Part shown: piece by piece, positions 37,329 to 64,000 of the stretch
How the letters are laid out: every line of letters begins with the position of its first letter
Position numbering within the stretch: the first letter of the stretch is position 1
Virus record (IMG/VR): IMGVR_UViG_3300023174_000039
Location: 186,001 to 250,000 of that record
Direction: 5' to 3' (one strand)
DNA: 64,000 bases
Notes under the pieces: model-generated
The model's database searches: none
What the model saw: only the letters and a program-made list of their open reading frames with translations
What the model was told of the DNA's origin: nothing
Position numbers and translations under genes: made by a program

Positions 37329-37379
37329 AATTTTTAAAGGAGAGTCCCTATGGACAGTGATAAGAGTGGGAAGATTTGT

Positions 37380-37455
37380 GGGACGTTAGCTCAGTTGGTA
37401 GAGCAGTAGACTTTTAATCTATTGGTCATTGGTTCAAATCCAATACGTCCTACCA
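37380..37455 (+). tRNA. tRNA-Lys(TTT)
   Basis: GTAGA-ctTTTaa-TCTAT. Confidence 0.93.
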
Positions 37456-37524
37456 TATAAAAACACACTTGGTATGCCCATAGCATACAGAGACATCAGA
37501 AACGTGAGTGTGTTTCTATATGGT
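37452..37524 (+). ncRNA. Structured spacer G linking tRNA-Lys and tRNA-His
   Basis: ACCATATA/TATATGGT plus AAACACACT/AGTGTGTTT. Confidence 0.6.
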
Positions 37525-37598
37525 GCTTGTCGTCAAGCGGTTAAGACCTCGGATTGTGATTCCGATATACGTGGGTTCGAATCCCATCAAGCACCCCA
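37522..37598 (+). tRNA. tRNA-His(GTG)
   Basis: G-1:C73; TCGGA-ttGTGat-TCCGA. Confidence 0.93.
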
Positions 37599-37599
37599 T

Positions 37600-37674
37600 G
37601 GATGTATAGCACAGCGGTAGTGCATCTCCTTCATACGGAGCAGGTCAGTAGTTCAAATCTACTTACATCCACCA
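37600..37674 (+). tRNA. tRNA with CAT anticodon, probably elongator Met
   Basis: CTCC-ttCATac-GGAG; fully paired acceptor stem; CCA. Confidence 0.82.
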
Positions 37675-37685
37675 TAACATTTTGT

Positions 37686-37759
37686 TGGGGGTTAGTTAAA
37701 TGGTATAACATCGGATTTTGATTCCGAGATCACAAGTTCGATTCTTGTACCCTCTGCCA
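37686..37759 (+). tRNA. tRNA-Gln(TTG)
   Basis: TCGGA-ttTTGat-TCCGA; unpaired 1:72. Confidence 0.9.
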
Positions 37760-37764
37760 CATAT

Positions 37765-37841
37765 CGGTCCTTAACTCAATTGGATAGAGTGCCAGTCTTC
37801 GAAACTGGAAGTTGGGAGTTCGACTCTCTCAGGACCGGCCA
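37765..37841 (+). tRNA. tRNA-Arg(TCG)
   Basis: CCAGT-ctTCGaa-ACTGG. Confidence 0.92.
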
Positions 37842-37880
37842 GTTTTTAACCTTGTATAATACTAGCCTATAAATATTTCC

Positions 37881-38642
37881 ATGAAGAAAGCACTTATACT
37901 TGGATGTAGTCATGCCGCTGGTTCAGAAATGATTGATGAGCCAGAAATTGATTTGTTAAACTATGGCAAAGACTACTATGGATACTGTATGAGTTATCCC
38001 TCACAGTTGGCACAATTGTTGGGGTACCATCCCGTAAATCATGCTATCCCTGGTGGTAGCAATGATGCAATGTTTAGAATATTTGAATCGTTTGTCAACC
38101 CTTACAAGAACTTTGAAAAGCCTGACATTGTGTTTGTATGTTGGACCGGTGGCGAACGTACCGAGGTATGGGACTTTGAAGAAGGCAACTGGATTGGCCT
38201 TGCTGGCGGTAAAACTAATTTTACAAAAACAATTCCTGATAGTGTTATACGGGAAGGGAAAATTATTCCTGAACCTATTATTAACGCCGATAACATTGTT
38301 ACATATCAAAAACAATGGATCACTCATCATGCTGATCGCTGGTGGGGTCGATTGAACAAGTTAAAAAACATACTGGCACTGAACACCATGGCAGCTCAAG
38401 AGAAGATCCCGGTTATTAATCTTGATAGTTTTGGTGCAGTGCAAGAATACACATTTCCCGACACAGTATATCGTCCCTTGGGACAAACTGAGTTTTGTAA
38501 CTGGGCGGTCGAGCGTGGATTCAACAACACCAAGTCGGGACATTACTTTTTGCAAGCACACAGAAGTTTTGCAAACTTCATTGCCAAAAAAGTTGATCCA
38601 AAGTATCATGCAGATAACATCGGAAAGATCATAACAGAATAA
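37881..38642 (+). CDS. SGNH/GDSL-like protein inside the tRNA array
   Basis: LILGCSH, NHAIPGGSN, SGHYFLQAH; TATAAATA ends 5 nt before the ATG. Confidence 0.7.
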   Translation: MKKALILGCSHAAGSEMIDEPEIDLLNYGKDYYGYCMSYPSQLAQLLGYHPVNHAIPGGSNDAMFRIFESFVNPYKNFEKPDIVFVCWTGGERTEVWDFEEGNWIGLAGGKTNFTKTIPDSVIREGKIIPEPIINADNIVTYQKQWITHHADRWWGRLNKLKNILALNTMAAQEKIPVINLDSFGAVQEYTFPDTVYRPLGQTEFCNWAVERGFNNTKSGHYFLQAHRSFANFIAKKVDPKYHADNIGKIITE

Positions 38643-38646
38643 TAAT

Positions 38647-38720
38647 GCGGGGCTCGTATAGTGGTAATACCTTAGCCTTCCAAGCTAAAGCGAGGGGTTC
38701 GATTCCCCTGCCCCGCTCCA
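38647..38720 (+). tRNA. tRNA-Gly(TCC)
   Basis: TTAGC-ctTCCaa-GCTAA. Confidence 0.93.
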
Positions 38721-38726
38721 CTTATT

Positions 38727-38802
38727 GCGCGGTTAACTCAGTCGGTAGAGTTCTTGCCTTACACGCAGGCTGTCGGCGGTTCGAGCCCGTCACCGCGCAC
38801 CA
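38727..38802 (+). tRNA. tRNA-Val(TAC)
   Basis: CTTGC-ctTACac-GCAGG. Confidence 0.93.
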
Positions 38803-38808
38803 CACATT

Positions 38809-38885
38809 CGGAGTGTAGCACAGCCTGGTAGTGCGCCTGGTTTGGGACCAGGAGGTCGTAGGTTCGAATCCTACTATTCCGACCA
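38809..38885 (+). tRNA. tRNA-Pro(TGG)
   Basis: CCTGG-ttTGGga-CCAGG. Confidence 0.93.
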
Positions 38886-38892
38886 CCTTTTT

Positions 38893-38984
38893 GGAAGATG
38901 ATGCAGTGGGGTTGGTCCCGCGACTGGCCTTGAAAACCAGGTTCTCTTAACAGGGATGGGGTTCGACTCCTCCGTCTTCCGCCA
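38893..38984 (+). tRNA. tRNA-Ser(TGA)
   Basis: ctTGAaa loop; long variable arm; G discriminator. Confidence 0.88.
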
Positions 38985-39028
38985 AATTAATTGACACCGC
39001 AGATGTTGTGTGTTATTATGATAGTTAG

Positions 39029-39113
39029 GCCCAGGTGGCGAAATTGGTAGACGCACCAGATTTAGGTTCTGGCGTAGAAATATGTGTCGGTTCGAGTCCG
39101 ACCCTGGGCACCA
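39029..39113 (+). tRNA. tRNA-Leu(TAG)
   Basis: CCAGA-ttTAGgt-TCTGG; variable arm. Confidence 0.93.
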
Positions 39114-46619: not shown

Positions 46620-47540
46620 ATGAAAAATACACTCATAGCATTCGTGCTGACAGTATGCACTTCATTGTGCTTTTCGCAACCACGTGTGACACTTGTTGTA
46701 GGTGGTCCACCTGGCGGTCCTTCAGATGCATTTGGCCGTGCTACTGCAGATTATCTAAAAAGAGTCAACGACAGCAATATTGTTGTAAGCAACAAAGCAG
46801 GAGCCAGCGGCTTAATAGCATTGAGATCAACACTCGAGGATCCAGGATTCAACGTACTGGTCGCCAGCACAGGTCCTTTTGTGTTCAATCGAGTCATGAT
46901 TGACAAACTGGACATAGAGCCTTTACAGGAATTTGATGTGTTTGGTCCTGTTGTTAGAACTCCTATGGCCTTGGTCACACAAGGCAATGGCAAAATTAAA
47001 ACCATTGCCGATTGGAAAAAGCAAGACCACGTGGTGTGCGGAGTAACCAATCAAAGTGGAGCACTATGGGCCAGACTGTTGTTTAAAAAGATTGGCGTCC
47101 CATCAACCATAATCATGTACAAAGGGTCTCCACAGCTGATTCAAGATATATTGTCCAAAACACTGGACTGCGGGTTAGATTCATATCCCACATACACTTC
47201 GTTGCATACCAGCGAGCATATAAAAATTGTAGCAGTTGCCGACACACAACGTCCCAAAGATCATGCCACCATTCCCACAGTTAAAGAGCTAGGAGTAGAC
47301 TTTGAAGCATACAGTTGGTTTGGTATTGGTATACCCAACAAGTATCGTGGCACCGACGAATACAATAAGATTGCACGAGCATTGACTCAGATTCATTTGG
47401 ATTCTGAGTTTACAAACAAAATGAACCATCAAGGCTACAGAGCCGGTCGTATCGTCGACAACTACAATCGCACACTGCAACAGGACTACGAGTACTGGAA
47501 TTCTGTCAGACAGCAATTTAACCTAGAGCGCACACCGTGA
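46620..47540 (+). CDS. tctC: Tripartite tricarboxylate transporter substrate-binding protein (Bug/TctC)
   Basis: Signal peptide; VVGGPPGGPSDAFGR, NKAGASG, YKGSPQ, PTVKELG. Confidence 0.85.
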   Translation: MKNTLIAFVLTVCTSLCFSQPRVTLVVGGPPGGPSDAFGRATADYLKRVNDSNIVVSNKAGASGLIALRSTLEDPGFNVLVASTGPFVFNRVMIDKLDIEPLQEFDVFGPVVRTPMALVTQGNGKIKTIADWKKQDHVVCGVTNQSGALWARLLFKKIGVPSTIIMYKGSPQLIQDILSKTLDCGLDSYPTYTSLHTSEHIKIVAVADTQRPKDHATIPTVKELGVDFEAYSWFGIGIPNKYRGTDEYNKIARALTQIHLDSEFTNKMNHQGYRAGRIVDNYNRTLQQDYEYWNSVRQQFNLERTP

Positions 47541-49013: not shown

Positions 49014-50096
49014 ATGTCAGATACCCGCACCGTCACAGCCGTACAGGCTCGTAAATCCTTGCTTAAAGCATTTAAAGTCCAACGTCCCTTGTTCTTGTGG
49101 GGTCCTCCAGGCATCGGTAAATCCGAGCTTGTGGAGAATATCACTCGAGATCTTGGTGGCTACATGATCGACCTGCGCTTGGGTCAGATGGAGCCCACAG
49201 ACATTCGTGGTATTCCGTTCTATAACAAGGACTCGGGCAAGATGGACTGGGCTCCCCCAGTAGAACTACCCGATGATGAACTGGCCAGCCAGTATCCTGT
49301 TGTGGTCCTGTTCCTAGACGAACTTAATAGTGCCGCACCCAGTGTCCAGAGCGCCGCTTATCAACTTATTTTGAACCGTCGTATTGGCAAATACAAGTTA
49401 CCAGACAATGTTGTAATGGTTGCCGCAGGTAATCGTGAGAGTGACAAAGGTGTTACTTATCGTATGCCTACTCCGCTTGCCAATCGTTTCATCCACCAAG
49501 AGATGAAAGTGGACTTTGCGTCTTGGCAAGAGTGGGCTGTTCTAAACAAGATCCACAAAGACGTTGTGGGTTATTTGAGTTTTGCCAAGCAAGACTTATA
49601 CGACTTTGATGCCAAGAGTGCCAGTCGTGCTTTTGCTACTCCACGTTCATGGAGTTTTGTAAGCGAGCTCTTAGATGACGAGTGCGACAACGACACCTTA
49701 ACCAACTTAATTGCTGGTACAGTAGGTGAAGGTCTTGCTGTTAAGTTTATGGCTCACCGCAAGGTTGCCAGCAAGATGCCTAATCCTTTAGACATCCTTA
49801 AAGGCAAGGTCAAGGACTTGAATGTCAAAGAGGTCAGTGCCATGTACAGTTTGGTGATCTCCATGTGCTACGAGCTCAAGGCCGCTGTGGAAAACAAGAC
49901 AGCAGACAAAGAGTTCCACGACATGGCAGATAACTTCCTGGGCTACATGATGAAGAACTTTGAGACAGAGTTGACAGTTATGGGTGCTCGTATTGCTCTT
50001 ACCACATACGACTTACCGTTCCTGCCTACCAAGCTCAAGAACTTTGATGAGTTCCATCAGCGTTTTGGTAAGTACATTTTGCAGGCATCCGCTTAA
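49014..50096 (+). CDS. MoxR-like AAA+ ATPase
   Basis: GPPGIGKS, LFLDE, AAGN, LANRF, ATPRSW; promoter TTGACA 48942/TACAAT 48965. Confidence 0.92.
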   Translation: MSDTRTVTAVQARKSLLKAFKVQRPLFLWGPPGIGKSELVENITRDLGGYMIDLRLGQMEPTDIRGIPFYNKDSGKMDWAPPVELPDDELASQYPVVVLFLDELNSAAPSVQSAAYQLILNRRIGKYKLPDNVVMVAAGNRESDKGVTYRMPTPLANRFIHQEMKVDFASWQEWAVLNKIHKDVVGYLSFAKQDLYDFDAKSASRAFATPRSWSFVSELLDDECDNDTLTNLIAGTVGEGLAVKFMAHRKVASKMPNPLDILKGKVKDLNVKEVSAMYSLVISMCYELKAAVENKTADKEFHDMADNFLGYMMKNFETELTVMGARIALTTYDLPFLPTKLKNFDEFHQRFGKYILQASA

Positions 50097-50213
50097 TTAA
50101 TTAGGAGGGTGGTGTTCAAAAAAACACAGGGCTGTGTCGCACTGCCCTCCTCTTTAACTTGACCAGTAAATTGCTCTTTGCTATAATACGTTATACAAAT
50201 TAGAAAGGCATAT

Positions 50214-51509
50214 ATGACATCTACTACTGCAACAAAAGAAGACAAGAAGAAGTTTGCCAACCTTCTAGGCAAAACAGATCCCAAACTTGACCGAGAAGTA
50301 CGAGAGATGCTTATCACTGCTCGTGTAGGCCTGTTGCTCAAGGCCAGTTTCTTTGGTAACTTGGCAACACGGTTGAAACTTGTTAACGCAGACGAGTGGT
50401 GCTCTACTGCCGCAACAGATGGCAGAAACTTCTATTACAATAGCCGCTTCATTAAAATGTTGCGTCCCAAAGAAATCGAATTCTTGTTTGGGCACGAGGT
50501 GCTACATTGTGTATATGACCACTTTGGACGTAGAGGTGAGCGAGATCACCAGTTGTTTAACATTGCCAATGACTATTGTGTAAACGCAGATTTGATCAAG
50601 CACCGTGTGGGTGAGAAGATCACTACAGTGCCTTGTTTGCACAATCCCAAGTATGATGGCATGAGCTCGGAAGAGATCTACGATATCTTGTACGAGAAGG
50701 CAGAGAAAATTGATGTGGGCAAGTTGTTGGATCAGATGATCGACGAGCACTTAGACGGCGAAGGCGATCCCGACGGTGATGGCGACAGTGATGGTGAGGA
50801 CGGCGACAAAAAAGGCAAGGGCCGACCAGTACTGACCCCAGAAGAGCGTCAGCAAATTAAAGACGAGATTAAGGAAGCCATGTTGGCGGCTGCCGCTACA
50901 GTAGACGGCGCAGGTAACTTGCCCGCAGGCGTTAAGCGTCTTATTAAAGAGCTCACAGAGCCCCAGATGAACTGGAGAGAACTGCTCCGTATGCAATTAG
51001 AGAGCACTATTAAGAGTGACTACACCTGGATGCGAGCAAGCCGCAAGGGCTGGCACATGGATGCTGTCATGCCTGGCATGAAGGTAGAGCCCATGATTGA
51101 TATTGCTGTGGCACTGGACGCTTCCGGCTCCATTAGCGAGACCATGCTAAAGGACTTCTTGGGTGAGATACAGGGTATCATGGACTCGTTCCCTGCATAC
51201 AAAATTCACGTTATTACTTTTGATACAGAGGCATATAACCCTGCACAATACGACAGTGACAACTTGGAAGACATTTGCGACTACGAGGTCAAAGGTGGCG
51301 GTGGTACAGACTTTGACTGTGTGTTTAACTACTTAAAGGCAGAGGAAATTGAGCCCAAGCGTCTTGTAGTGTTTACAGATGGCTACCCGTTTGGTAGCTG
51401 GGGAGACCCAGCCTATGCAGATACAGTTTGGATCTTGCATGGCACAAGAACTATTGAGCCGCCATTTGGGCAGTATGCGTATTATGGAGAGGACTTGGAT
51501 GACCATTGA
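50214..51509 (+). CDS. Metallopeptidase-like plus VWA-like protein (DUF2201 type)
   Basis: TAATDG, HEVLH (HEXXH), DASGS MIDAS, GGGGTDF, FTDG; promoter TTGACC 50159/TATAAT 50182. Confidence 0.9.
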   Translation: MTSTTATKEDKKKFANLLGKTDPKLDREVREMLITARVGLLLKASFFGNLATRLKLVNADEWCSTAATDGRNFYYNSRFIKMLRPKEIEFLFGHEVLHCVYDHFGRRGERDHQLFNIANDYCVNADLIKHRVGEKITTVPCLHNPKYDGMSSEEIYDILYEKAEKIDVGKLLDQMIDEHLDGEGDPDGDGDSDGEDGDKKGKGRPVLTPEERQQIKDEIKEAMLAAAATVDGAGNLPAGVKRLIKELTEPQMNWRELLRMQLESTIKSDYTWMRASRKGWHMDAVMPGMKVEPMIDIAVALDASGSISETMLKDFLGEIQGIMDSFPAYKIHVITFDTEAYNPAQYDSDNLEDICDYEVKGGGGTDFDCVFNYLKAEEIEPKRLVVFTDGYPFGSWGDPAYADTVWILHGTRTIEPPFGQYAYYGEDLDDH

Positions 51510-54764: not shown

Positions 54765-55094
54765 ATGGCAATAACAAACAGACCCGAATCTGACTACAAA
54801 CACTGGCAACCTGAACGAGTCGAAGTCATCGGTGATCGTGCTGTGCAGTTTAGTGATATATGTGTACACGAGTTCACCATGGGTGATGTTGAAGATCCAG
54901 AACTATATGCCGCACAGCCGCTATGGGAATGGCAAGAGTCCGAAGCAGGCAAGTGGGTTATGGAGCATGCTGTTGAAAAACCTTATTGGATACAGTCGTT
55001 AGATTATAATTCATGGGGGCATAGATTCAAAGTTATGGCACGTATGAGCAAGCAAGACCAAACTTTTTGGACATTGAAATGGGGCAACAAATGA
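54765..55094 (+). CDS. Hypothetical protein
   Basis: MGDVEDPELYAAQPLWEWQ. Confidence 0.72.
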   Translation: MAITNRPESDYKHWQPERVEVIGDRAVQFSDICVHEFTMGDVEDPELYAAQPLWEWQESEAGKWVMEHAVEKPYWIQSLDYNSWGHRFKVMARMSKQDQTFWTLKWGNK

Positions 55095-56059
55095 AAATAT
55101 TAGTAACAGGTGGCTTGGGACTTATCGGTCACAATGTTGTACAACGATTAGAAGCCAAAGAACACGAAGTAATCATCACAGATACTCGTACCAACTACGG
55201 CATTATTCCGCAGGCAGAACTTGACTACTTGATGGCGGAACGGTTAAAAAAGATATCAGGCAAAAATATCTATCATGTTGATATTACTGATGCTGACAAC
55301 TTTGATTGGCTAGTGAACAAGCACAAGCCCGAAGTAATCATTCACATGGCAAGTTTTCCCCGACAGAAAGTTGTCAACGCCAACCCTGCTTGGGGCAGTC
55401 GTGTTATGATGGAAGGCTTGATCAACGTTTGTGAGAGTGCCAAAAAACACGGTGTAGAACGTGTTGTGTACATTTCAAGTTCAATGGTATATGGCGACTT
55501 TGAAGATCAAGTCGAAGAAGACTACGACTGTAAACCCATTGGCCAATATGGCATTATGAAATTAACTGGAGAAGACATTGTCAAAGACTACCATCGTCGC
55601 GGTGCTTTCGATTATGCTGTTATTAGGCCTAGTGCTGTATACGGCCCCTTGGATGTGGAAGACCGAGTCGTGGCAAAATTTATGCTCGGCGCCATGCGAG
55701 GAGGCGTTCTCCGAGTTAATGGGGCAGGGGAGACGCTAGACTTTACCTATGTGGATGATGCCGCAGACGGCATTGTGGCGGCAGCTACTCGTATCATGGC
55801 TCGTAATAGCACTTATAACATTACCAAATCACATTCAGTGAGCTTGTTAGAAGCCGCAGAAATGATTGTTAAAATTGTTGGCAAGGGTACCATTGAGTGC
55901 AAAGACAAAGACGCAGACTTTCCGTCACGTGGAGCACTAAACATTGACCGTGCTAGAACAATTCTAGGTTATGATCCCAAAGTGGATGTACAAGAAGGAT
56001 TCCAAAATTACTTCAACTGGCTTAACAATTCCGTTTACTGGTCTAAAAAAGCAGTATAA
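55091..56059 (+). CDS. NAD-dependent epimerase/dehydratase
   Basis: VTGGLGLIG, SSSMVYG, YGIMK, RPSAVYGP, DFTYVDD. Confidence 0.92.
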   Translation: MKILVTGGLGLIGHNVVQRLEAKEHEVIITDTRTNYGIIPQAELDYLMAERLKKISGKNIYHVDITDADNFDWLVNKHKPEVIIHMASFPRQKVVNANPAWGSRVMMEGLINVCESAKKHGVERVVYISSSMVYGDFEDQVEEDYDCKPIGQYGIMKLTGEDIVKDYHRRGAFDYAVIRPSAVYGPLDVEDRVVAKFMLGAMRGGVLRVNGAGETLDFTYVDDAADGIVAAATRIMARNSTYNITKSHSVSLLEAAEMIVKIVGKGTIECKDKDADFPSRGALNIDRARTILGYDPKVDVQEGFQNYFNWLNNSVYWSKKAV

Positions 56060-57119
56060 CAATCTCCGCACAGAGATTTTAGACGCCACTGACGAAGTTC
56101 TTCGCAGTGGTCAACTCATGAACGGCAACAACACCGTTGAGTTTGAAGCATGGCTTGCAAAACGCAATCATGTACGTTATGCAGTAACTTGTCATTCAGG
56201 CACACATGCACTTGAAATTCTAGCCAGTTACTGGGCAACATGCGACCGTCTTGCACCACATCCTCCTACTGTGTTAATACCCTCAATGACTTATGTGGCC
56301 ACTGCCAATGCATTTATACGTGCAGGCTGGGATATACACATCATTGACACAGACATACACGGCCTAATAGATGTCAACAAAATACCCGAAAATTTAAGTT
56401 ACCAGGCCATTGTAATGGTTGGCTTGTATGGTGCGGCTGTAACACATCACGGCAATGTTCGTGCCTGGAACCAATGGCTACATCGTGATACCATTATAAT
56501 TGAAGATGCCGCACAACATTGGTTGGCAGCAGGTAGCGCCAGGACTGGTCGTGGTGGCGCTGCCATCAGTTTTGATCCCATGAAGAACTTGGCTTGTTAT
56601 GGCAATGGTGGTGCTGTGGTTACAGACAATCTGGATCTAGCAGAATATGCAAGGGCCTGGCGTGACAACGGTAAACCTACGCATCGTAATCCTGGAACTA
56701 ACAGCCGCATGAGTGAACTAGACTGTGCTCATATGTTGGTCAAAGCAAAGCACATTGATCAGTGGCAGGCACGTAGACAAAGTATTGCCGATCACTGGTG
56801 TGAAAGATTTAAAAATGCAAACATACGCTGTTTGATCAACGACTCAAATGCACACAACCATGCTGTGCATAAGTTTGTGATAGATGCTGATGGTCGAGAT
56901 ACACTAAAGGCCAATCTCTCTCTGCGCAAAATTGATACACGAGTGCATTATGCAAATCCCTTGCATGAAATGAGTTTGTATCGTGCATATCCAGGTCCTG
57001 ATATGCTGGCCGCAAGTTCTAGTCTTGCTCGTCGTGTGCTAAGTCTGCCTATCTATCCTGAACTAACAGACCTAGAAGTTGAATACATCAGCGATCAGGT
57101 GTTAGACTGCGTCGCATAA
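55971..57119 (+). CDS. DegT/DnrJ/EryC1/StrS aminotransferase; start uncertain
   Basis: HSGTHAL, EDAAQ, SFDPMKNLACYGNGGAVVT, LSLPIYP. Confidence 0.9.
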   Translation: MIPKWMYKKDSKITSTGLTIPFTGLKKQYNNLRTEILDATDEVLRSGQLMNGNNTVEFEAWLAKRNHVRYAVTCHSGTHALEILASYWATCDRLAPHPPTVLIPSMTYVATANAFIRAGWDIHIIDTDIHGLIDVNKIPENLSYQAIVMVGLYGAAVTHHGNVRAWNQWLHRDTIIIEDAAQHWLAAGSARTGRGGAAISFDPMKNLACYGNGGAVVTDNLDLAEYARAWRDNGKPTHRNPGTNSRMSELDCAHMLVKAKHIDQWQARRQSIADHWCERFKNANIRCLINDSNAHNHAVHKFVIDADGRDTLKANLSLRKIDTRVHYANPLHEMSLYRAYPGPDMLAASSSLARRVLSLPIYPELTDLEVEYISDQVLDCVA

Positions 57120-60100
57120 ACGCATAACTAGCTAACCACTCCCATTCATAGCTCTTTTTAAGAGCCGTAAAATCTCCGCCCACTTCTTCATAGTACTCTA
57201 CAGCATCCTCTGCGCCAAAGCGACTCCACTCTGCGTTCTTGACTTCTCCTGTATCGCTGAGCCACAGGTTGAGTCGGTACTCGTTTTCTACATCTGGTAA
57301 ACTGTGTTTGAGCTTGAGTACTTCACGGAATGCTGTGCGCCAGGCCATCCAAGGTGTTTCGGTGTAGTTGGCTGTGCCACTTATGATTGGAACCACTTCG
57401 TGTGGTTGGTCCATGGTAAAGTCTAGACCTGTTCCTGCATTTTCCAAAGTCATCTGTCGGTTGTAAGCAATCATGGCCTGGTGGCCATATACCAATCCAT
57501 TTACGGGATTGTGTGCGTGGAAGATGTAATGTTTGGGCTGTTGCATACGGTCAGGTTGCCATGTCCAATCAAATCTATGATCAACTTCTAGCTTGGCAAA
57601 CACCGCAAAGAACCATGGTGTTGTGCTTAATCTAGCGGCTGCTTGATATGCTGCCACACGACCATTTACTCCTTTTGAGTGATGTATGTGATTGCAATCC
57701 AAGCCTTCCATCTGCACTGCCCACACCAGGTGTTGGTAGTTAAACTCAGCATAAGGCTCGCCATTTGAAATAAACACAATGTCTAACGGATGCTCCTTGA
57801 GCATGCGTTGAGTTTTATCAATGTAAGGATAATCGTATAACTGCGTCTTGATGTAAGGTACAGCCGCTTGTGGTACAATCACAGTACTGGCACCCGAGCT
57901 CAATGGCACAATGGTCTTGCTACGATCACGCCATAAACTCACTGTATGTAAACGATGATCCGCATAATCTACTGTGGTAAACATTGTGAGTGGTGCAGTC
58001 CATACATGATTACGCACAACATCCACATGTGAGTCTTCGGTGTGTTGCACTATAGGCATTGGCCAACGAGGTACTGTCTGATCGTTACAGTAGTTCACCG
58101 TCTCAAACCAATCTAACAACTCAAGCTCGGCAATTTTGGCCTGCAATGCTTTTACTGGCACAAAGAATGTGTCTCCAAACTTTTGCTCATTGCTGGGGAA
58201 TACATGCAACATGTCTCGTTGCCAGGCTTCGGGTTGCCAAGAGAAGTCAAATGCAGTGTAATCACACACTGAACCAACCACCCACACATGATCATCTGCA
58301 ACACCATCCAGCAGTCGCTTGAGTGTGTCAAGATAGTTGTCAAAGTAACGTGCTTTCTTGACCACACGATACCGTTGTTCAAGATTGGCAATAACTGTTG
58401 CGCTTTCTTTGTTGCCAAAGTCCACAACATAGATGTCGTGTGCGTCAGCTGGCGCATGTATGCGTTGGTCAGTAACAAAGTTCAAGTTGGGAAACTCTTC
58501 TATGTTCTTGGCCCACTTGGCATGACGTTCAAACTCCCAACGGTTGATTAGGAATGTATCCGACCACTTGTTCCACTGTGATCCAAACACATGTGTCATT
58601 GAACTTTGCCAAGGTTGGGCATGCCAGGCAAAGTCAAACTCTGTGTAGTCGTTCTCACTGCCAATAACCCAGAAACGATTCTGTTTGGTCTTGTTCAAGC
58701 AACGTTTGATAGTGTCTTGTATGCTGTTGACATAACGAATCTTCTGTATGTGCGGATAACGTTCTTGCAGTTGTTTGAAACGCACCGTGCTCAGTGCATT
58801 AGATCGATCCATGTAAAAGATATCTTGTACTTGTACCGCTTTCTTCTCTTTTTGTATAAGCGGGGCGTCGCCGGCAAATTTCAATTCAGACGCACCGGGT
58901 ACTGTGTAGGTAAGTCCAATACTCATTTGATACTCACTGCCAAAGTGATGTATGTATGGCTCGTCTTTGGGATGCGGGTGCCAGGAAAAATCTACATTGG
59001 TTGCGTTGATCTCTTCAGGAATATTCCAGCGATCCATAACTGGCAACAGTCTAGCTCTTACAGAATCAACAAACTTGCGCTCAGTTGCACCTGGTACATG
59101 ATATTCAATCGTGCTCATTTCTTCAGCTGGATGCCATTGATTACCAAACACATAGATAAATGGAGGGTCGCCCGGATCAGGAACCCAACTGCGATCAAAC
59201 TCAAATGGAACTGTGGCTGTGACTATCCACTGATCATGTGCCAACAATTTTGCCACAGGCTCGTTCATGAACTTGCGTTCTGTGGCTCCTGCAACTGTGT
59301 ATTCCACTGTGGGCATGATTTCTGCTGGCCAGTGTTGATTACCAAACACATAGACAAATGGAGGTGATCCTGGATCTGGTTCCCATGAGTAGTCAAACTC
59401 ACAGGGGTGGTGTGTGGTAAACAGTTCAGGATTGCCCACACGCAACGCACGAGGTTCACTCATGTACTTGATTGTGGTAGCAGTTGCCACACGATATTGC
59501 AATGCCGGACGTTGTTCAGGTGTGAGCCATTGATTACCAAACACATAGATGTATTCTGGATCTGTGGGATTTGGCCTCCAGGAATAATCAAACGATTCAA
59601 CATTGTCAAGTATTTCAAAATCTGCTGGACTCTGTGCCACAGTGGCAATCAAGTCATCCACATACTTGATTTCAGTGGCGCCAGACACTGTGTAAACCAC
59701 AGTGGCTTCTAACACAGCAGGATTCCATTGATTACCAAACACATAGATAAATGGCGGATCAAACGGATTGGGTTCCCAAGAATAGTCAAATTTGCTCACT
59801 GCAATGTTGTGTTTGAACAAGCTGGGTTGCGGCAATCGTGTGGTACGTGCTTCCTGGTACTTGACTTCTGTCGCGCCCGCTACTACATATCTTACACTGG
59901 CTTTGTACTCTGCTGGGTTCCATTGATTGCCCCAAACATAGATATAAGGGGGATCTTTGGGATTAGGCACCCAGGTCCAGTCCCATGCAGATTCGTCTAT
60001 GGGTTCTAGTATTTCCCACCCAATTCTAGACTCTGCAAGTGTTGCAACTGGCAAGTCTACAAACTTTTCTTTTGTTGCCCCGGGCATGACATACCGTACA

Positions 60101-63100
60101 GTGGGCATGACCGTGCCGGGGTAGTGTTGGTTGCCAAACACATAGATATACAACTCTTCGGTGTTGCTGGGATGCCATGAGTAATCAAAATTGTCAATAG
60201 ACTCTAGCACTTGCCAATTTTCCATTGCCGGCAAACGTTGAGCCACTATGGGAACATATTTTATTTTTTCCGCTCCGGGCACATGATACACAGGGCCGCC
60301 ATTGCTTTGCCATTGTGTAGCAAATTTGTATATGTAAGGTTCTTCAGTGTTGTCCGGATGCCACGAGTAATCAAATGCCTCAACGGGATACGGCACAGTC
60401 CAATGTGTGCTGTCTGGAGTTCTACGATGTGCTTGCTCAGTGTATTTGGTTTCTGTAGCGCCAGGAACAACATATCGTGCACCGCCGTTGTGCTGCCATT
60501 GTGTGGCAAATTCGTATATGTAGGGAGGATCTTGTGGATCAGGTACCCAGGCATAGTTCACACTGTCTTGCGACACTTGGTCAGGTATCTCCCAATTGTC
60601 TGAACAGGCAGCCAATTTTACTGTGCCCGACATGTACTTGCGTTCAGTTGCACCTGGTACACGATATTCAATTGTGGGCATCTTTTCAGCTGGCCAGTAA
60701 TTGTTGCCCCACACATAGATGTAGGCAGGATCTTTAGGGTGTGGTTGCCAAGACCAATTGAAACTTTTGTTATCAATGGGGTGTAACACATGCCAATTTT
60801 TTGTGGTGCCCCGAAGTTGTGCTTTGGGCTCTGCAACATACTTACGATCAGTGGCACCATTTACTTTGTACACTGGCCCACCTTCGTCGTACCATTGTGT
60901 ACCAAACTCATAGATGTATGCAGGATCTAGCACATCCGGATGCCAACTATAATCAAAGTATACAACGTTGTCAGTATTAGTCCAAGCAGTGTCATTGCCT
61001 TCTGCACGAACTTTAAATGCATCAGTAAGTTTGACTTTGGTGGCACCGGGCACAGTGTATGTTACACCGCTGGCTGTTTGCCATTGGCTTGCAAAGTGAT
61101 ATATGTAAGGCGGTGCGAATGGATCAGGTTGCCATGAATAATCCACACTGTTTGTTGCAATATATGCTGGCACTGACCAATTGTCTTTTTTAGGCAATGG
61201 TTTGACCCTAAACGCATCCACTAACTTGATCTCAGCGGCACCCGGTACTGTGTAAGTAACACCACTACTAGCAGACCATTGATTGGGGAAGTGATAAATG
61301 TAGGCAGTATCTAGCGGGTTAGGATGCCAGGAATAATCCACACTGGATTTTGAAACAGAGTCAGGTACAAACCAATTGTCTTTTTTAGGCAACGACTTGA
61401 CTCGGAATACATCTACCAATTTGATCTCAGTAGCGCCTGGTACTGTATATGTAACACCACTTGCTGATTGCCATTGATCTGGAAAGTGATAAATGTAAGG
61501 TGGTGCAAATGGATCAGGATGCCATGAATAGTCAACTGAGTCAGCTTTGATGTTAGCAGGAACACTCCAATTGTCTTTGTTAGATACTGATTTGACTTGA
61601 AACGCATCCACTAACTTGATCTCAGTGGCACCTGGTACTGTATATGTAACACCACTTGCGGGTTGCCATTGATCTGGAAAGTGATATATGTAAGGCGGTG
61701 CCAACGGATCTGGTTGCCAGGAATAATCCACACTATCAGAGATAACACTGTTGGGTACTGACCAATTTGTTTGATCAGGTAAGGGCTTGACACAGAATGC
61801 ATCCACTAACTTGATCTCAGTGGCACCTGGTACTATGTATGTTACACCACTGCTGGCTGACCATTGATTGGGAAAGTGATAAATGTAGGCAGTATCTAAC
61901 GGGTTTGGATACCATGAATAATCCACGCTAGACTCTACCACAGTAGGTGGTACAGTCCAATTGACTTTGTTAGGTAAGTGATTGACACAGAATGCATCCA
62001 CTAACTTGATCTCGGTAGCACCTGGTACTGTGTATGTTACACCACTTGCTGATTGGTACTGACTTGGGAAGTGATAAATGTAGGGTGGATCTAGCAGGTT
62101 AGGGTGCCACGAATAATTAACAGAGTCAACTTTGATAGTAGCAGGAACTGACCAATTGTCTTTACAGGGCAATGTGGTCACTTGAAACGCATCCACCAAC
62201 TTGATTTCAGTGGCACCAGGCACAGTGTATGTTACACCACTGGCTGATTGCCATTGATCTGGAAAGTGATAAATGTAAGGTGGTGCAAATGGATCAGGAT
62301 GCCATGAATAATCCACGCTGGCAGTAGCGACACTGTCGGGTATGAACCAATGTTGGTTACAGGGCAATGTGGTCACTTGAAACGCATCCACCAACTTGAT
62401 TTCAGTGGCGCCCGGAACGACATATGTTACCCCACTTGCGGGTTGCCATTGATCCGGGAAGTGATAAATGTAAGGCGGGTCTAGCGGGTTAGGATGCCAT
62501 GAATAATCAACGGTGGACTTTGAGACAGAGTCTGGTATTAACCAATTGTCTTTACAGGGCAATGTGGTCACTTGAAACGCATCGATTAGTTTGATCTCAG
62601 TGGCACCGGGCACAGTGTATGTTACACCACTGGCTGATTGATACTGGCTTGAAAAATGATAAATGTAAGGAGGATCCAATGGATCTGGGTGCCATGAATA
62701 GTCTACTCTGTCAAAGTTCACATGATTTGGGCATTTCCAATGTGCGTATTGTCGGGTTGCTTTAGCCTGTTGTGTATGTACCAGCTTGATACCCTGATTG
62801 CCTGTGTACACAGGACCACCGGCGCTTTGCCATTGTGTGCCAAAGTGATATTCATATGCTGGTTCACGATAGTCCGGATGCCATGAAAAATCAAAACTAT
62901 GTTGATCAATTCCTGCAGGAATCCGCCAGTTATCTACTGTAGACAATCTTGTGATAGTACGATCTACATGATAGTGTGTTTCAGTATAGCCCGCAGCAGG
63001 CACAAGATACACACCTGCATCTGCTTGATGTTGGCTAGGCCAGGCATGTCGCTGATGAGCTTGCCAAGGAACAGGCTCCCAAAGAAAATCCCACTCTCTA

Positions 63101-63231
63101 AGATCTGCTAAGTATGTGATCCACCAAAAGAACCTTGTGCGACTCAACTGCTGTGCATGCCCAATATCACTTGCTTCACGCTCATGAGCAAACAACCCTG
63201 GCTTCTTACCTGAATAAAAAATATCAAACAT
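57088..63231 (-). CDS. 2047-aa protein with 21 tandem Trp/Pro/Tyr-rich repeats flanked by GT-A-like modules
   Basis: 6.1-kb open frame. C-terminal DIVFISNGEP...AARLSTTPWFFAVFAK module resembles phage glycosyltransferase-like proteins. Confidence 0.9.
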   Translation of the reverse strand: MFDIFYSGKKPGLFAHEREASDIGHAQQLSRTRFFWWITYLADLREWDFLWEPVPWQAHQRHAWPSQHQADAGVYLVPAAGYTETHYHVDRTITRLSTVDNWRIPAGIDQHSFDFSWHPDYREPAYEYHFGTQWQSAGGPVYTGNQGIKLVHTQQAKATRQYAHWKCPNHVNFDRVDYSWHPDPLDPPYIYHFSSQYQSASGVTYTVPGATEIKLIDAFQVTTLPCKDNWLIPDSVSKSTVDYSWHPNPLDPPYIYHFPDQWQPASGVTYVVPGATEIKLVDAFQVTTLPCNQHWFIPDSVATASVDYSWHPDPFAPPYIYHFPDQWQSASGVTYTVPGATEIKLVDAFQVTTLPCKDNWSVPATIKVDSVNYSWHPNLLDPPYIYHFPSQYQSASGVTYTVPGATEIKLVDAFCVNHLPNKVNWTVPPTVVESSVDYSWYPNPLDTAYIYHFPNQWSASSGVTYIVPGATEIKLVDAFCVKPLPDQTNWSVPNSVISDSVDYSWQPDPLAPPYIYHFPDQWQPASGVTYTVPGATEIKLVDAFQVKSVSNKDNWSVPANIKADSVDYSWHPDPFAPPYIYHFPDQWQSASGVTYTVPGATEIKLVDVFRVKSLPKKDNWFVPDSVSKSSVDYSWHPNPLDTAYIYHFPNQWSASSGVTYTVPGAAEIKLVDAFRVKPLPKKDNWSVPAYIATNSVDYSWQPDPFAPPYIYHFASQWQTASGVTYTVPGATKVKLTDAFKVRAEGNDTAWTNTDNVVYFDYSWHPDVLDPAYIYEFGTQWYDEGGPVYKVNGATDRKYVAEPKAQLRGTTKNWHVLHPIDNKSFNWSWQPHPKDPAYIYVWGNNYWPAEKMPTIEYRVPGATERKYMSGTVKLAACSDNWEIPDQVSQDSVNYAWVPDPQDPPYIYEFATQWQHNGGARYVVPGATETKYTEQAHRRTPDSTHWTVPYPVEAFDYSWHPDNTEEPYIYKFATQWQSNGGPVYHVPGAEKIKYVPIVAQRLPAMENWQVLESIDNFDYSWHPSNTEELYIYVFGNQHYPGTVMPTVRYVMPGATKEKFVDLPVATLAESRIGWEILEPIDESAWDWTWVPNPKDPPYIYVWGNQWNPAEYKASVRYVVAGATEVKYQEARTTRLPQPSLFKHNIAVSKFDYSWEPNPFDPPFIYVFGNQWNPAVLEATVVYTVSGATEIKYVDDLIATVAQSPADFEILDNVESFDYSWRPNPTDPEYIYVFGNQWLTPEQRPALQYRVATATTIKYMSEPRALRVGNPELFTTHHPCEFDYSWEPDPGSPPFVYVFGNQHWPAEIMPTVEYTVAGATERKFMNEPVAKLLAHDQWIVTATVPFEFDRSWVPDPGDPPFIYVFGNQWHPAEEMSTIEYHVPGATERKFVDSVRARLLPVMDRWNIPEEINATNVDFSWHPHPKDEPYIHHFGSEYQMSIGLTYTVPGASELKFAGDAPLIQKEKKAVQVQDIFYMDRSNALSTVRFKQLQERYPHIQKIRYVNSIQDTIKRCLNKTKQNRFWVIGSENDYTEFDFAWHAQPWQSSMTHVFGSQWNKWSDTFLINRWEFERHAKWAKNIEEFPNLNFVTDQRIHAPADAHDIYVVDFGNKESATVIANLEQRYRVVKKARYFDNYLDTLKRLLDGVADDHVWVVGSVCDYTAFDFSWQPEAWQRDMLHVFPSNEQKFGDTFFVPVKALQAKIAELELLDWFETVNYCNDQTVPRWPMPIVQHTEDSHVDVVRNHVWTAPLTMFTTVDYADHRLHTVSLWRDRSKTIVPLSSGASTVIVPQAAVPYIKTQLYDYPYIDKTQRMLKEHPLDIVFISNGEPYAEFNYQHLVWAVQMEGLDCNHIHHSKGVNGRVAAYQAAARLSTTPWFFAVFAKLEVDHRFDWTWQPDRMQQPKHYIFHAHNPVNGLVYGHQAMIAYNRQMTLENAGTGLDFTMDQPHEVVPIISGTANYTETPWMAWRTAFREVLKLKHSLPDVENEYRLNLWLSDTGEVKNAEWSRFGAEDAVEYYEEVGGDFTALKKSYEWEWLASYAFMRRSLTPDR
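58825..62928 (-). repeat. 21 coding repeats of about 62-68 aa; nine near-identical 195-nt units at 60985-62739
   Basis: Consensus W.(I/V)P......(V/F)DYSW.P.P.DPPYIY.F..QW.......Y.VPGATE.K. Confidence 0.95.
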
Positions 63232-64000
63232 GATTAGAATAGACGAAATTTACAACAACACTTTTTGGCCCTGGATTAATAATCAAATCCCTGGCACTAG
63301 AACATACTTCTGTGATCCACCTGGCCGCAGTGATCCAGATGCATTGTTTAACTTTGGTCGAGATGACATTCCCGAAAACGATTTTGTGTTTTTCCATGAT
63401 CAAGAACCTGTGCATTTAGATCTTCATAGACCTTTGTTTACACAGGTCAGAGAGTACACCGAAGACATTAGAAAAAGCAACGGCGATGTCAAAAAAGGCG
63501 GGCATGTAATTGTCAGCGAGCATGGAGAATACGTGCGTGAGTTGTGTCGTGCATACGGATGGAAGAGCCATTATTACTTTTATCATGGATGGGCTTGCAA
63601 GGATTGGTTTCGAGGATATGATAAAACTTTCTTGATCCCTCGAGCAAAAGACAGAGCTCCTACACGCACATTTATGAGTCCTAATAGGATTGTTGCCGGC
63701 AAACGAGATCACAGAGTTTTGTTTTTGTATAATGTATTTAAGCACGGGCTAGATCAAAATTATATTTCGGCTCCTAGAATATGTCCTTACGAAAATGTAG
63801 ATATTTCACAGATAGCACTCAAGTATAATAACATATATCCTGACATAGAGCAAGTGTTCTTGGCAGCAGAATTGCCTAGATTGTTTGCCGGCGAAGACAC
63901 TCAGATCATGACCAGCTGTTGGTTGGGCAACTATGCAGAAGCACAAGACAGTTTGGTGTATGTTCCTACAGAGACTGTGTACTTTGGCAAACGATTACAC
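63230..64000 (+). CDS. Hypothetical protein, possibly glycosyltransferase-like; runs off the right edge
   Basis: Not in the track. Open frame of 257 codons to the window end, MIRIDEIYNNTFWPW...FHDQEP...VPTETVYFGKRLH. Confidence 0.78.
   Translation, partial: MIRIDEIYNNTFWPWINNQIPGTRTYFCDPPGRSDPDALFNFGRDDIPENDFVFFHDQEPVHLDLHRPLFTQVREYTEDIRKSNGDVKKGGHVIVSEHGEYVRELCRAYGWKSHYYFYHGWACKDWFRGYDKTFLIPRAKDRAPTRTFMSPNRIVAGKRDHRVLFLYNVFKHGLDQNYISAPRICPYENVDISQIALKYNNIYPDIEQVFLAAELPRLFAGEDTQIMTSCWLGNYAEAQDSLVYVPTETVYFGKRLH

What the first reader, a model, noticed from the sequence alone, without database searches (positions are those of the whole stretch)
57088..63231. 2047-aa protein with 21 Trp/Pro/Tyr repeats between GT-A-like modules, including a recent 9-copy expansion
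Seen: a 101-aa N-module, 21 repeats of DYSW.P.P..PPYIY.F..QW...Y.VPGATE.K, then C-terminal modules. Repeats 2-10 are exactly 65 aa and very similar at DNA level. The N-module and three C-modules share a DI(F/Y/V)...(F/W)WV...DF.W.P..WQ pattern, whose DF.W.P core recurs in every repeat. Inference: the repeat is a degenerate fragment of the GT-A-like module amplified into a long scaffold or ruler. Copy number may vary by recombination, tuning a glycan-building or glycan-binding assembly line for virion glycosylation. It is the only large minus-strand gene in the window.
Basis: partly seen in the sequence, partly recalled or inferred. Interest (0 to 1): 0.76.

Follow-up and report, generated by a model that had tools for sequence, protein, structure and literature searches.

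The report
Giant glycosyltransferase-fold repeat protein, jumbo phage
A freshwater jumbo phage encodes a real 2047-residue protein made of one complete sugar-transferase-fold domain, three cut-down copies of it and 21 copies of a small piece of that fold, and it belongs to a large unnamed phage family whose repeat number runs from about 8 to 38.

Summary
The ORF, the 21 repeats, the N-module and the three C-modules are all there. Profile comparison shows they are homologous to one another. The repeat matches the stretch just after the DxD strand of the module (97.5%, E 8e-12; shuffled controls at most 4%).

AlphaFold models (pLDDT 93-94) and fold searches place N, C1 and C3 in the GT-A / nucleotide-diphospho-sugar transferase fold (Z up to 11.7). 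Only C3 is a complete domain. The repeat is an all-beta unit with no Pfam or PDB counterpart.

Distant stand-alone relatives in Streptomyces, Dyadobacter and Ralstonia phage RsoM2USA keep DxD. The two bacterial ones lie in glycosyltransferase operons. In this protein and nearly all of its close relatives DxD is replaced by F-A-K.

The gene overlaps a DegT sugar aminotransferase tail to tail and sits among dehydratase, carbamoyltransferase and radical-SAM genes. This arrangement recurs in relatives.

Repeats 2-9 are lineage-specific extra copies: a relative with 13 repeats maps one-to-one onto repeats 1 and 10-21. They are not recent at the DNA level (55-82% identity, dS about 1, dN/dS 0.09).

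Most likely it is a metal-independent glycan-pathway transferase on a length-variable rod. Its target and its activity are untested.

The parts
57088..63231 (-). Whole gene, 2047 aa plus stop codon
   Evidence: The start MFDIFY... is conserved in relatives.
62929..63231 (-). N-module, aa 1-101: a miniature GT-A-like half-domain that contains a cryptic repeat copy (aa 48-101)
   Evidence: hhalign vs C1 99.9%. All 50 best VIA-wide PDB matches map to aa 1-97, and the rows examined are GT-A or nucleotidyltransferase folds, Z 4.7-6.4.
58831..62928 (-). Repeat array, aa 102-1467: 21 units of 62-68 aa. Two subtypes: type A (units 1-11, 13, 14, 21) and type B with a 3-aa insertion (units 12, 15-20).
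   Evidence: AF2 of aa 1-440: pLDDT 93.5, pTM 0.74, short beta strands. No match to the repeats in Pfam, PHROGs or PDB and no lead from the Atlas.
60955..62703 (-). Expanded block, repeats 2-10 (aa 177-759). Repeats 2-9 are extra copies of the unit whose ortholog is single in relative P0142.
62357..62551 (-). 195 nt (one unit, spanning mid-repeat 2 to mid-repeat 3) that one contig of an independent freshwater sample skips. Either a possible minus-one-copy variant or an assembly-graph artefact.
   Evidence: joint 62356->62552, 32 nt shared, depth 7.3
58444..58830 (-). C1 half-module, aa 1468-1596. Weakly conserved; S-E-N at the DxD position.
   Evidence: VIA Z about 10 to IspD, MobA and b4GalT over model residues 11-142
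57790..58443 (-). C2, aa 1597-1814: a half-module (aa 1597-1720; S-V-C at the DxD position; conserved WV.SS.CDY..FDF.W.P and QKFGDTF motifs) plus a small alpha/beta linker (aa 1721-1814).
   Evidence: hhalign C1 vs C2a 100%; conservation; AF2
57091..57789 (-). C3, aa 1815-2047: the only complete GT-A-fold domain, followed by a C-terminal helical bundle. Conserved residues: D1817, E1825, NPxNxLxYG (1908-1916), D1937, WRTAFRE (1964-1970).
   Evidence: VIA Z 10-11.7 to B4GALNT1, WrtF, ThuS/SunS, SpsA and IspD; Foldseek; alignment
57592..57600 (-). Codons for F1878-A1879-K1880, at the position where stand-alone family members have D-G/A-D (the DxD motif).
55971..57119 (+). DegT/DnrJ/EryC1 sugar aminotransferase, convergent with the giant gene and overlapping its 3' end by 32 nt. 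The pairing is conserved in relatives.
55067..56059 (+). NDP-sugar 4,6-dehydratase/epimerase
63230..64000 (+). Start of a divergent 368-aa ORF of unknown function. Its ATG overlaps the giant gene's ATG (CATG). It is the first of three conserved unknown ORFs that lead into the radical-SAM / carbamoyltransferase island beyond the window.

Best explanation
This is a genuine gene of a roughly 332-kb freshwater jumbo phage. The protein was built by repeated duplication of one ancestral GT-A (nucleotide-diphospho-sugar transferase fold) domain and of a piece of it.

Shown:
- C3 (aa 1815-2047) is a complete GT-A-fold domain of an unnamed family.
- Bacterial members of that family carry DxD and lie in glycosyltransferase operons.
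- In the phage subfamily that carries the C2-C3 core, DxD is replaced by x-x-Lys (F-A-K here), while the other family-wide motifs stay conserved.
- N, C1 and C2 are truncated half-domains without these motifs.
- The 21 repeats are homologous to the loop-strand-loop-strand segment that follows the DxD strand. They are predicted with high confidence to be small beta units and are under strong purifying selection.

Inferred:
- C3 binds, and probably transfers without a metal, a tailored amino-deoxy sugar. That sugar would be made by the overlapping DegT aminotransferase, the dehydratase and the neighbouring tailoring enzymes. The invariant Lys would take the place of the metal at the diphosphate.
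- The half-modules and the repeat array are non-catalytic. They would form an extended rod that holds or spaces the catalytic end on a large or periodic acceptor, either a virion surface or a host envelope polymer.
- Rod length evolves by gain and loss of whole units.
For: - Fold: AF2 pLDDT 94.3 / pTM 0.88. Foldseek PDB hits are K4CP, Mimivirus R699, LH3, WrtF, RmlT and ArnC (E 3e-5 to 1e-3). VIA gives Z 10-11.7 for C3 and about 10 for C1. The N-module matches only this fold.
- Family and motif: 32 genomic relatives include cultured Streptomyces and Dyadobacter. Their alignment shows DGD/DAD against F-A-K. The third position is Lys in 120/120 close C3 relatives and 119/120 long relatives; DxD is present in 119/120 RsoM2USA-like proteins.
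- Bacterial contexts: GT4 - homolog - Glyco_tranf_2_4 - FkbM methyltransferase in Streptomyces. In Dyadobacter: GT25, radical SAM, GT1, the homolog fused to Glyco_tranf_2_4, GT2, FkbM.
- Phage context: DegT and a dehydratase are adjacent; radical SAM/SPASM genes, a carbamoyltransferase and a GDSL gene lie upstream. The same partners occur in 5 of 5 long relatives looked up, and a repeat-less member also overlaps a DegT gene.
- Repeat origin.
- Selection on the repeats: dN/dS 0.09 in the core and 0.40 in the linker.
- Length variation.
- Precedent for GT-A enzymes that lost DxD and use basic side chains: PMC7185993.
Against: - No activity, donor or acceptor is known for any member of the family.
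- Loss of DxD could mean loss of catalysis.
- No Pfam GT model matches at sequence level.
- The fold is shared with nucleotidyltransferases such as IspD and MobA, which score nearly as well, so sugar transfer is not proven.
- The model coordinates could not be inspected, so 'rigid rod' rests only on pTM 0.74.
- Nothing shows where the protein acts.
- A stand-alone relative in the same genomic slot of a related phage has no recognisable sugar genes nearby.
Confidence: 0.55

Rival explanations
1. Pseudoenzyme or structural protein. The GT-A domain has lost catalysis and serves as a glycan- or nucleotide-sugar-binding head on a repeat stalk. The protein would then be a virion fibre, decoration protein or adhesin, or a scaffold or chaperone for other glycan enzymes.
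For: - DxD is lost in C3 and absent from N, C1 and C2.
- Variable numbers of repeats (8-38) are typical of fibre-like proteins.
- GT-A folds that serve without catalysis are known: the vaccinia H3 envelope protein appears among the fold matches, and COSMC is a catalytically dead GT31 scaffold (PMC7185993).
Against: - Every other family-wide active-site motif, and the substituted Lys, is nearly invariant.
- The gene sits in a metabolic island, overlapping DegT, and not among structural genes.
- There is no PHROG structural-protein hit.
- The RsoM2USA homolog was not among the abundant virion bands that were reported.
Confidence: 0.2
2. The repeat array is itself the acceptor or substrate. Each unit would be cross-linked or otherwise modified by the neighbouring radical-SAM/SPASM enzymes, or glycosylated (possibly by C3 itself, as in glycogenin). 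The product would be a heavily modified fibril.
For: - Arrays of radical-SAM/SPASM paralogs flank the giant gene in the window's own genome and in 5 of 5 long relatives looked up, with up to about seven in L020.
- Each unit has nearly invariant Trp, Tyr and Lys residues.
- SPASM enzymes commonly modify peptides and proteins (general knowledge).
Against: - Radical SAM genes also accompany repeat-less homologs (RsoM2USA_349; Dyadobacter), so the link is to the C3 family and not to the repeats.
- The island matches a sugar-tailoring toolkit: DegT, dehydratase, carbamoyltransferase, UDP-glucose dehydrogenase, sulfotransferase and methyltransferase.
- The repeats are predicted to be well folded, and their conserved aromatic residues may simply form the core.
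- There is no conserved Cys and no leader-like element.
Confidence: 0.1
3. C3 is a nucleotidyltransferase-type or DNA-directed enzyme. It would activate a sugar phosphate or glycosylate phage DNA, not build a glycan on a protein or polysaccharide.
For: - IspD, MobA and CDP-glucose pyrophosphorylase score Z about 10, close to the true glycosyltransferases.
- A Lys at the phosphate site is typical of those enzymes (general knowledge).
- ThyX and a second nucleotide/sugar cluster lie nearby.
Against: - The wider family has a classical DxD and sits in operons with GT1/GT4/GT2 genes.
- The best matches and the C-terminal half fit glycosyltransferases.
- There is no G-x-G-x-R nucleotidyltransferase loop at the N-terminus (sequence).
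Confidence: 0.07
4. The long repeat array is an assembly artefact or a chance ORF.
For: In Logan k=31 contigs the 61.5-62.6 kb stretch is broken into pieces of about 200 nt, so those data do not confirm the order of the units.
Against: - The copies are only 55-82% identical in DNA and the longest exact repeat is 68 nt.
- An independent sample from another study holds 89% of the gene's sampled words. Its contigs reproduce 58585-61492 and three of the short pieces without a mismatch.
- More than 770 long relatives share the same architecture.
- Strong purifying selection acts on the repeats.
Confidence: 0.01

Closest known systems
Multi-domain GT-A glycosyltransferases: E. coli K4 chondroitin polymerase K4CP, human LH3, CHSY3-CHPF, LARGE1
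   Same: Several GT-A-fold modules in one chain. These are the best whole-model Foldseek matches. LH3 and CHPF also carry accessory, non-catalytic GT-like modules.
   Different: Those proteins have two complete domains with DxD. This protein has one complete domain with F-A-K, three half-modules, and a 21-unit repeat array that none of them has.
Viral multi-domain capsid-glycosylating enzymes: PBCV-1 A064R, Mimivirus R699, mycobacteriophage Che8 glycosyltransferase
   Same: Virus-encoded cytoplasmic GT-A enzymes next to virus-encoded sugar-nucleotide pathways. They appear among the fold matches.
   Different: No sequence homology, no repeat array, and DxD is retained in the PBCV-1 enzyme (general knowledge). 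The target of the present protein is unknown.
Metal-independent GT-A enzymes: GT14 C2GnT-L, bacterial GT6, WrtF
   Same: GT-A fold with the DxD motif lost. In GT14 basic side chains replace the metal (PMC7185993; PMC3961637 and PMC12595478). WrtF is among the best structural matches to C3.
   Different: Unrelated families. The DxD-to-Lys switch here happened inside one family, between its stand-alone and phage multi-module branches. Activity is untested.
Unnamed stand-alone C3 family: Ralstonia phage RsoM2USA_348, and proteins of Streptomyces spp. and Dyadobacter sp. in glycosyltransferase operons
   Same: True sequence homologs of C3 (23-31% identity; tblastn E 7e-11 for RsoM2USA, 2e-17 to 6e-10 for the Streptomyces and Dyadobacter loci) that share all the motifs except DxD.
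   Different: They are 220-400 aa (633 aa when fused to Glyco_tranf_2_4), have DxD, and lack C1, C2, N and the repeats.
Jumbo-phage sugar-production and modification clusters (Iyer et al. 2021, PMC7824862)
   Same: Epimerase/dehydratase, glycosyltransferase and carbamoyltransferase gene clusters in jumbo phages, read there as surface-polysaccharide modification or secondary-metabolite synthesis.
   Different: In the passages searched, that survey does not describe this giant repeat protein or the radical-SAM/SPASM arrays that flank it.

Membership tests
GT-A / nucleotide-diphospho-sugar transferase fold superfamily | Rossmann-like alpha/beta/alpha sandwich with the characteristic mixed sheet | tested here: met
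   C3: Z 10-11.7 over 127-143 residues at 2.8-3.3 A. C1: Z about 10. N-module: Z 5-6.4, with matches only to this fold. Foldseek probabilities 0.97-1.0.
GT-A glycosyltransferases (catalytic) | DxD metal and diphosphate-binding motif at the end of strand beta4 | tested here: not met
   C3 has F1878-A-K1880, C1 has S-E-N, C2 has S-V-C and N has Y-L-A. Stand-alone relatives have DGD or DAD in the same column.
GT-A glycosyltransferases (catalytic) | Catalytic base (xED), G-loop and C-His as defined in PMC7185993 | tested here: inconclusive
   An invariant D1937 and the NPxNxLxYG(H) loop are candidates. Without model coordinates or a structure-based alignment they cannot be assigned.
GT-A glycosyltransferases (catalytic) | Transfer of a sugar from an activated donor | not testable with these tools
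   No member of the family has been assayed.
Pfam glycosyltransferase families (GT2 PF00535 and others) | Score above the gathering threshold | tested here: not met
   No hit for the protein or its pieces. One of 69 relatives hits PF00535, at E 0.027. hhalign against the phage's own GT2 is not significant.
Unnamed C3 family (RsoM2USA_348 / Streptomyces / Dyadobacter) | Sequence homology across the whole domain, with shared D...E, NPxNxLxYG, D and WxxFRE motifs | tested here: met
Bifunctional GT-A polymerases (K4CP type) | Two complete catalytic GT-A domains | tested here: not met
   Only C3 is complete. C1 and C2a are about 125-130 aa and lack the C-terminal half and its motifs.
Known repeat or domain families (Pfam, PHROGs, PDB folds) | A significant sequence or structure match to the 65-aa unit | tested here: not met
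   No Pfam or PHROG hit. No PDB match within aa 100-440. Atlas scores at most 0.63. AFDB InlB-B-repeat hits have probability at most 0.23. The 440-aa model lowers sensitivity.
Radical-SAM/SPASM-modified peptide or protein substrates | Genetic linkage to the maturase that is specific to the substrate, recognisable modification sites, and an observed mass change | tested here: inconclusive
   Linkage exists but extends to repeat-less homologs. Modification cannot be tested here.
Phage tail fibre or virion structural proteins | Location in the structural module, homology to structural families, or detection in virions | tested here: not met
   No structural PHROG hit. The neighbours are metabolic genes. 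No virion data exist for this family.

The most novel reading that the evidence does not exclude
An enzyme sub-domain, the post-DxD hairpin of a GT-A fold, became an autonomous folding unit and was amplified into a rod whose length can change. That rod either acts as a ruler, placing a metal-independent sugar transferase at a set distance on the capsid or tail lattice. Or it is itself decorated by the flanking sugar and radical-SAM enzymes and forms glycosylated fibrils on a phage, analogous to the fibrils of giant viruses.
Probability: 0.15. Interest if true: 0.85.

Novelty: new variant of a known kind. Interest (0 to 1): 0.6.

Why it matters
- **A large uncharacterised family.** It has more than 770 long members and hundreds of shorter ones in freshwater and other metagenomes. 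It has no Pfam model and no annotation, and it holds a fixed place in the sugar and radical-SAM islands of a jumbo-phage lineage.
- **A natural DxD-to-Lys switch.** The change happens within one GT-A family, which makes it a clean system for studying how metal-independent glycosyl transfer, or pseudo-enzyme formation, arises.
- **A repeat born from an enzyme fragment.** A new repeat domain that came from part of an enzyme fold is uncommon in protein evolution.
- **A possible link to phage glycan decoration.** If the rod length sets the position of glycan addition, or if the rod is the glycan carrier, this would show that phages can build elaborate glycan decorations, which are so far best known from giant viruses of eukaryotes.

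Tried and rejected
- **Sequence searches that found nothing useful.** Pfam on the whole protein and on five pieces, PHROGs, and PDB by sequence with a single protein and with a profile. The YenC2 and eIF4E rows at E 0.5-1.5 are noise. A Pfam scan of 69 relatives gave no consistent family.
- **Phage collection.** Only RsoM2USA holds a relative of C3, and there is no near-identical DNA.
- **Atlas on five repeats.** Scores were at most 0.63, so there is no lead.
- **hhalign of C3 against the phage's own GT2 genes.** Not significant. The best local match does align the family's ...TTPWFFAVFAK with the GT2 ...TTPYILFIDAD, and the later alignment of distant homologs confirmed this.
- **Structure prediction.** The model coordinates are not exposed, so the rise per repeat and the burial of the aromatic residues could not be measured.
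- **'Recent expansion, recombination-prone'.** Rejected on the dS values.
- **Assembly artefact.** Rejected.
- **The RsoM2USA paper.** It gives no data on ORF348.
Full report
**What is there**

The window is bases 186001-250000 of a 331,654-bp IMG/VR virus record with CheckV completeness 95%, so it comes from a jumbo phage. Sequencing runs that hold the gene are lake and freshwater metagenomes.

ORF 57088..63231 on the minus strand encodes 2047 aa. It is the only large minus-strand ORF in the window.

Anchoring on D[YF]SW.P gives 21 tandem units at aa 114-1414, with periods of 62-68 aa. Units 2-9 are spaced by exactly 65 aa and unit 10 by 63 aa. A repeat HMM finds a 22nd, cryptic copy inside the N-module at aa 48-101.

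The units fall into two subtypes. Type A comprises units 1-11, 13, 14 and 21. Type B, with a 3-aa insertion, comprises units 12 and 15-20.

**Is it more than chance, and are the parts related?**

Profile-profile comparison gives these results:

| Pair | hhalign result |
|---|---|
| N vs C1 | 99.9% |
| C1 vs C2a | 100% (E 7e-41) |
| C1 vs C3 | 98.3% |
| repeat vs C1 | 97.5% (E 8e-12) |
| repeat vs C2a | 93.3% |
| repeat vs N | 96% |
| repeat vs C3 | 49% |

For the repeat rows, the copies that lie inside N-modules were removed from the repeat profile first. Thirty column-shuffled controls never exceeded 4% probability or a score of 17, against real scores of 41-65.

The aligned part of the repeat is its first 30 or so residues. 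These correspond to the DF.W.P loop, the H.F strand, the QW loop and the next strand of the module.

**The expansion**

Units 2-10 form a tight protein subfamily. Relative P0142 has 13 units, and these map one-to-one onto query units 1, 10, 11 ... 21 at 71-95% identity. Units 2-9 are therefore extra copies of the ancestor of unit 10. Relative P0127 has four copies at the same slot.

The copies are not similar at the DNA level. Pairwise identity is 55-82% and median dS is about 1.1-1.3. dN/dS is 0.09 in the 42-aa core and 0.40 in the linker. The longest exact DNA repeat in the gene is 68 nt.

So the expansion is lineage-specific but old, and the copies have been kept by purifying selection on the protein.

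Among 120 long relatives the unit count runs from 3 to 38, mostly 7-31. It correlates with protein length at r = 0.96. Many relatives have expanded blocks of their own.

P0121 is 93% identical to the query in the C-terminal region but much more diverged in the N-terminal units. This indicates mosaicism.

**Assembly check**

The likely source run gives one contig that matches 57600-61492 perfectly. An independent sample from another study holds 89% of the gene's sampled words. Its contigs reproduce 58585-61492 and three of the roughly 200-nt pieces inside the expanded block without a mismatch.

The expanded block itself is fragmented in these k=31 contigs. With exact repeats of at most 68 nt, an assembly collapse or inflation is unlikely; that is an inference.

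One contig of the independent sample joins 62356 to 62552. This is an in-frame loss of exactly one unit across a shared 32-mer, and it could be a real minus-one variant or a graph artefact. No long reads were available.

**Fold**

Sequence libraries give nothing: Pfam, PHROGs and PDB sequence searches all came back empty.

AlphaFold2 with family alignments gave two confident models:
- aa 1455-2047: pLDDT 94.3, pTM 0.88.
- aa 1-440: pLDDT 93.5, pTM 0.74.

For the C-terminal model, Foldseek finds multi-domain and single GT-A glycosyltransferases. They include K4CP chondroitin polymerase, Mimivirus R699, LH3, WrtF, PcManGT, RmlT and ArnC (E 3e-5 to 1e-3, probability 0.97-1.0). AFDB returns GT2-like proteins. 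BFVD returns viral multi-GT proteins, including the Che8 glycosyltransferase.

Domain-level alignment with VIA gives:
- C3 (aa 1814-1958): Z 10-11.7 to B4GALNT1, a Leptospira GT, WrtF, ThuS/SunS and SpsA. The related nucleotidyltransferases (IspD, CDP-glucose pyrophosphorylase) score nearly as well.
- C1 (aa 1465-1596): Z about 10.

For the N-terminal model, all 50 best matches from a search of 48,161 chains map to aa 1-97, and the rows examined belong to this same fold superfamily (Z 4.7-6.4). None maps to the repeats.

The repeats are short beta strands with a 3-10 turn. They have no counterpart in PDB, AFDB or the Atlas beyond weak 'bacterial repeat' noise.

Only C3 is a complete domain, made of the GT-A core plus a helical bundle. 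N, C1 and C2a are half-modules of 100-130 aa.

**The family and the DxD switch**

C3 has more than 1785 close relatives. The C-terminal 568 aa has more than 770 relatives of 1130-3330 aa and 829 clusters at 50% identity. These include repeat-less proteins of 440-570 aa that consist of C2-C3 or C1-C3. All are unnamed.

A scan of 185,579 species genomes found 32 loci. Among them are cultured Streptomyces spp. and Dyadobacter sp. CY347, at 23-31% identity.

In the alignment, these stand-alone proteins and RsoM2USA_348 carry D-G/A-D exactly where this protein has F1878-A-K1880. The other motifs are shared: D1817, E1825, NPxNxLxYG, D1937 and WxxFRE. Counted over all proteins fetched:

| Group | State of the DxD column |
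|---|---|
| Close C3 relatives | third position Lys in 120 of 120 |
| Long relatives | third position Lys in 119 of 120 |
| Cluster representatives | third position Lys in 142 rows |
| RsoM2USA-like stand-alone proteins | DxD in 119 of 120 |

GT-A families that lost DxD and work without metal, some through basic side chains, are documented (GT14, bacterial GT6). So are catalytically dead GT-A scaffolds such as COSMC (PMC7185993). The sequence alone cannot say which of the two applies here. The near-invariance of the Lys and of the remaining motifs favours a working site; that is an inference.

**Genomic context**

In the window:
- The gene's 3' end overlaps a convergent DegT/DnrJ/EryC1 aminotransferase by 32 nt.
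- Next comes an NDP-sugar dehydratase/epimerase, then ThyX.

Upstream, beyond the window, lie three conserved unknown ORFs, DUF6071, six or seven radical-SAM/SPASM genes, a GDSL hydrolase and a carbamoyltransferase.

The same partners flank all five long relatives that were looked up, at 31-70% identity. About seven radical-SAM/SPASM genes sit directly upstream in L020. UDP-glucose dehydrogenase, sulfotransferase and methyltransferase genes occur in others. A repeat-less 546-aa member also overlaps a DegT gene tail to tail. A 741-aa member in a contig binned to a Haliscomenobacter MAG shows the same layout.

In bacteria, the DxD-type homolog sits in these operons:
- Streptomyces diastatochromogenes: GT4, the homolog, an unknown gene, Glyco_tranf_2_4, FkbM methyltransferase.
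- Dyadobacter: the homolog is fused to Glyco_tranf_2_4 and lies between GT25, a radical SAM gene, GT1, GT2, FkbM and a methyltransferase.

This is consistent evidence by association that the family works in glycan assembly.

Iyer et al. interpreted jumbo-phage sugar, GT and carbamoyltransferase clusters as surface-polysaccharide modification or secondary-metabolite systems (PMC7824862).

**Mechanism**

Shown:
- One complete GT-A-fold domain with a Lys in place of DxD.
- Three degenerate half-modules.
- A conserved, folded array of variable length, derived from a sub-domain.
- Tight and conserved linkage to amino-sugar synthesis and tailoring genes.

Inferred:
- C3 binds and probably transfers a tailored amino-deoxy sugar without metal.
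- The rest of the protein is a non-catalytic rod that spaces or anchors the catalytic end on a large or periodic acceptor.

The acceptor is unknown; it could be the virion, the host envelope or the protein itself. There is no signal peptide or membrane segment at the N-terminus, so the protein presumably acts in the cytoplasm; this comes from reading the sequence.

The rivals, in order of likelihood, are a pseudo-enzyme or fibre, the repeats as a radical-SAM or glycan substrate, a nucleotidyltransferase or DNA-directed enzyme, and an artefact. They are weighed in their own sections of this report.

**Verdict**

Its 'recent, DNA-similar' element is wrong.

The GT-A reading and the fragment-amplification idea are supported. 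Virion glycosylation and ruler function remain open.

This is a new architectural variant and a new unnamed family within a known fold. It includes a new repeat unit and an unusual DxD-to-Lys switch within a single family.

Noticed in passing
window 63229-63232: The giant gene and the divergent 368-aa ORF start head to head with overlapping ATGs (CATG), so there is no intergenic promoter space. The same 2-nt overlap occurs in relative L019 (L019 10001/10002). No Shine-Dalgarno-like sequence precedes the giant gene's ATG.
   Followed up: partly
L012 (G000:C1:249200-267000), 3975-17692: An array of six or seven radical-SAM paralogs. In several of them the SPASM domain lies N-terminal to the radical-SAM core, the reverse of the usual order. 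A carbamoyltransferase and a GDSL hydrolase are interspersed. Relative L020 has about seven such genes in a row.
   Followed up: partly
window 16858-23517: A second sugar/nucleotide cluster: an epimerase/dehydratase, a 209-aa DegT fragment (possibly a split gene), GTP cyclohydrolase I, a methyltransferase, a weak GT2-like ORF (20310-21164) and a weak radical-SAM ORF. The GTP cyclohydrolase hints at a deazapurine or pterin pathway.
   Followed up: no
window 30868-39113: 24 tRNA genes in about 8 kb, including Trp, Tyr and Pro, the residues that are enriched in the giant protein.
   Followed up: no
window 46620-47540 and 49014-51509: A phage-encoded TctC-family periplasmic solute-binding protein homolog, and a MoxR-type AAA ATPase paired with a DUF2201 metallopeptidase/VWA protein. 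The MoxR, DUF2201 and ThyX block is syntenic in all related contigs that were examined.
   Followed up: no
L022, L023 (contigs of 183 kb and 148 kb binned to a Haliscomenobacter sp. MAG): The two contigs carry homologs at 66-68% identity. L022, the one examined, has a 741-aa version flanked by convergent ORFs the size of the DegT and dehydratase genes. These are probably jumbo-phage contigs binned with a Bacteroidota MAG, which may hint at the host.
   Followed up: partly
L015 8001-9080: In a related phage a 359-aa stand-alone C3-like gene occupies the same slot, convergent with ThyX, without repeats and without recognisable sugar genes within 8 kb.
   Followed up: no
window 60751-62311 (gene nt 921 and 1701): A 68-nt exact match between repeats 4 and 8, four units apart, even though the two units are only 78% identical overall. 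TRF also reports a 390-nt period. This suggests block duplication or a patch of gene conversion.
   Followed up: no
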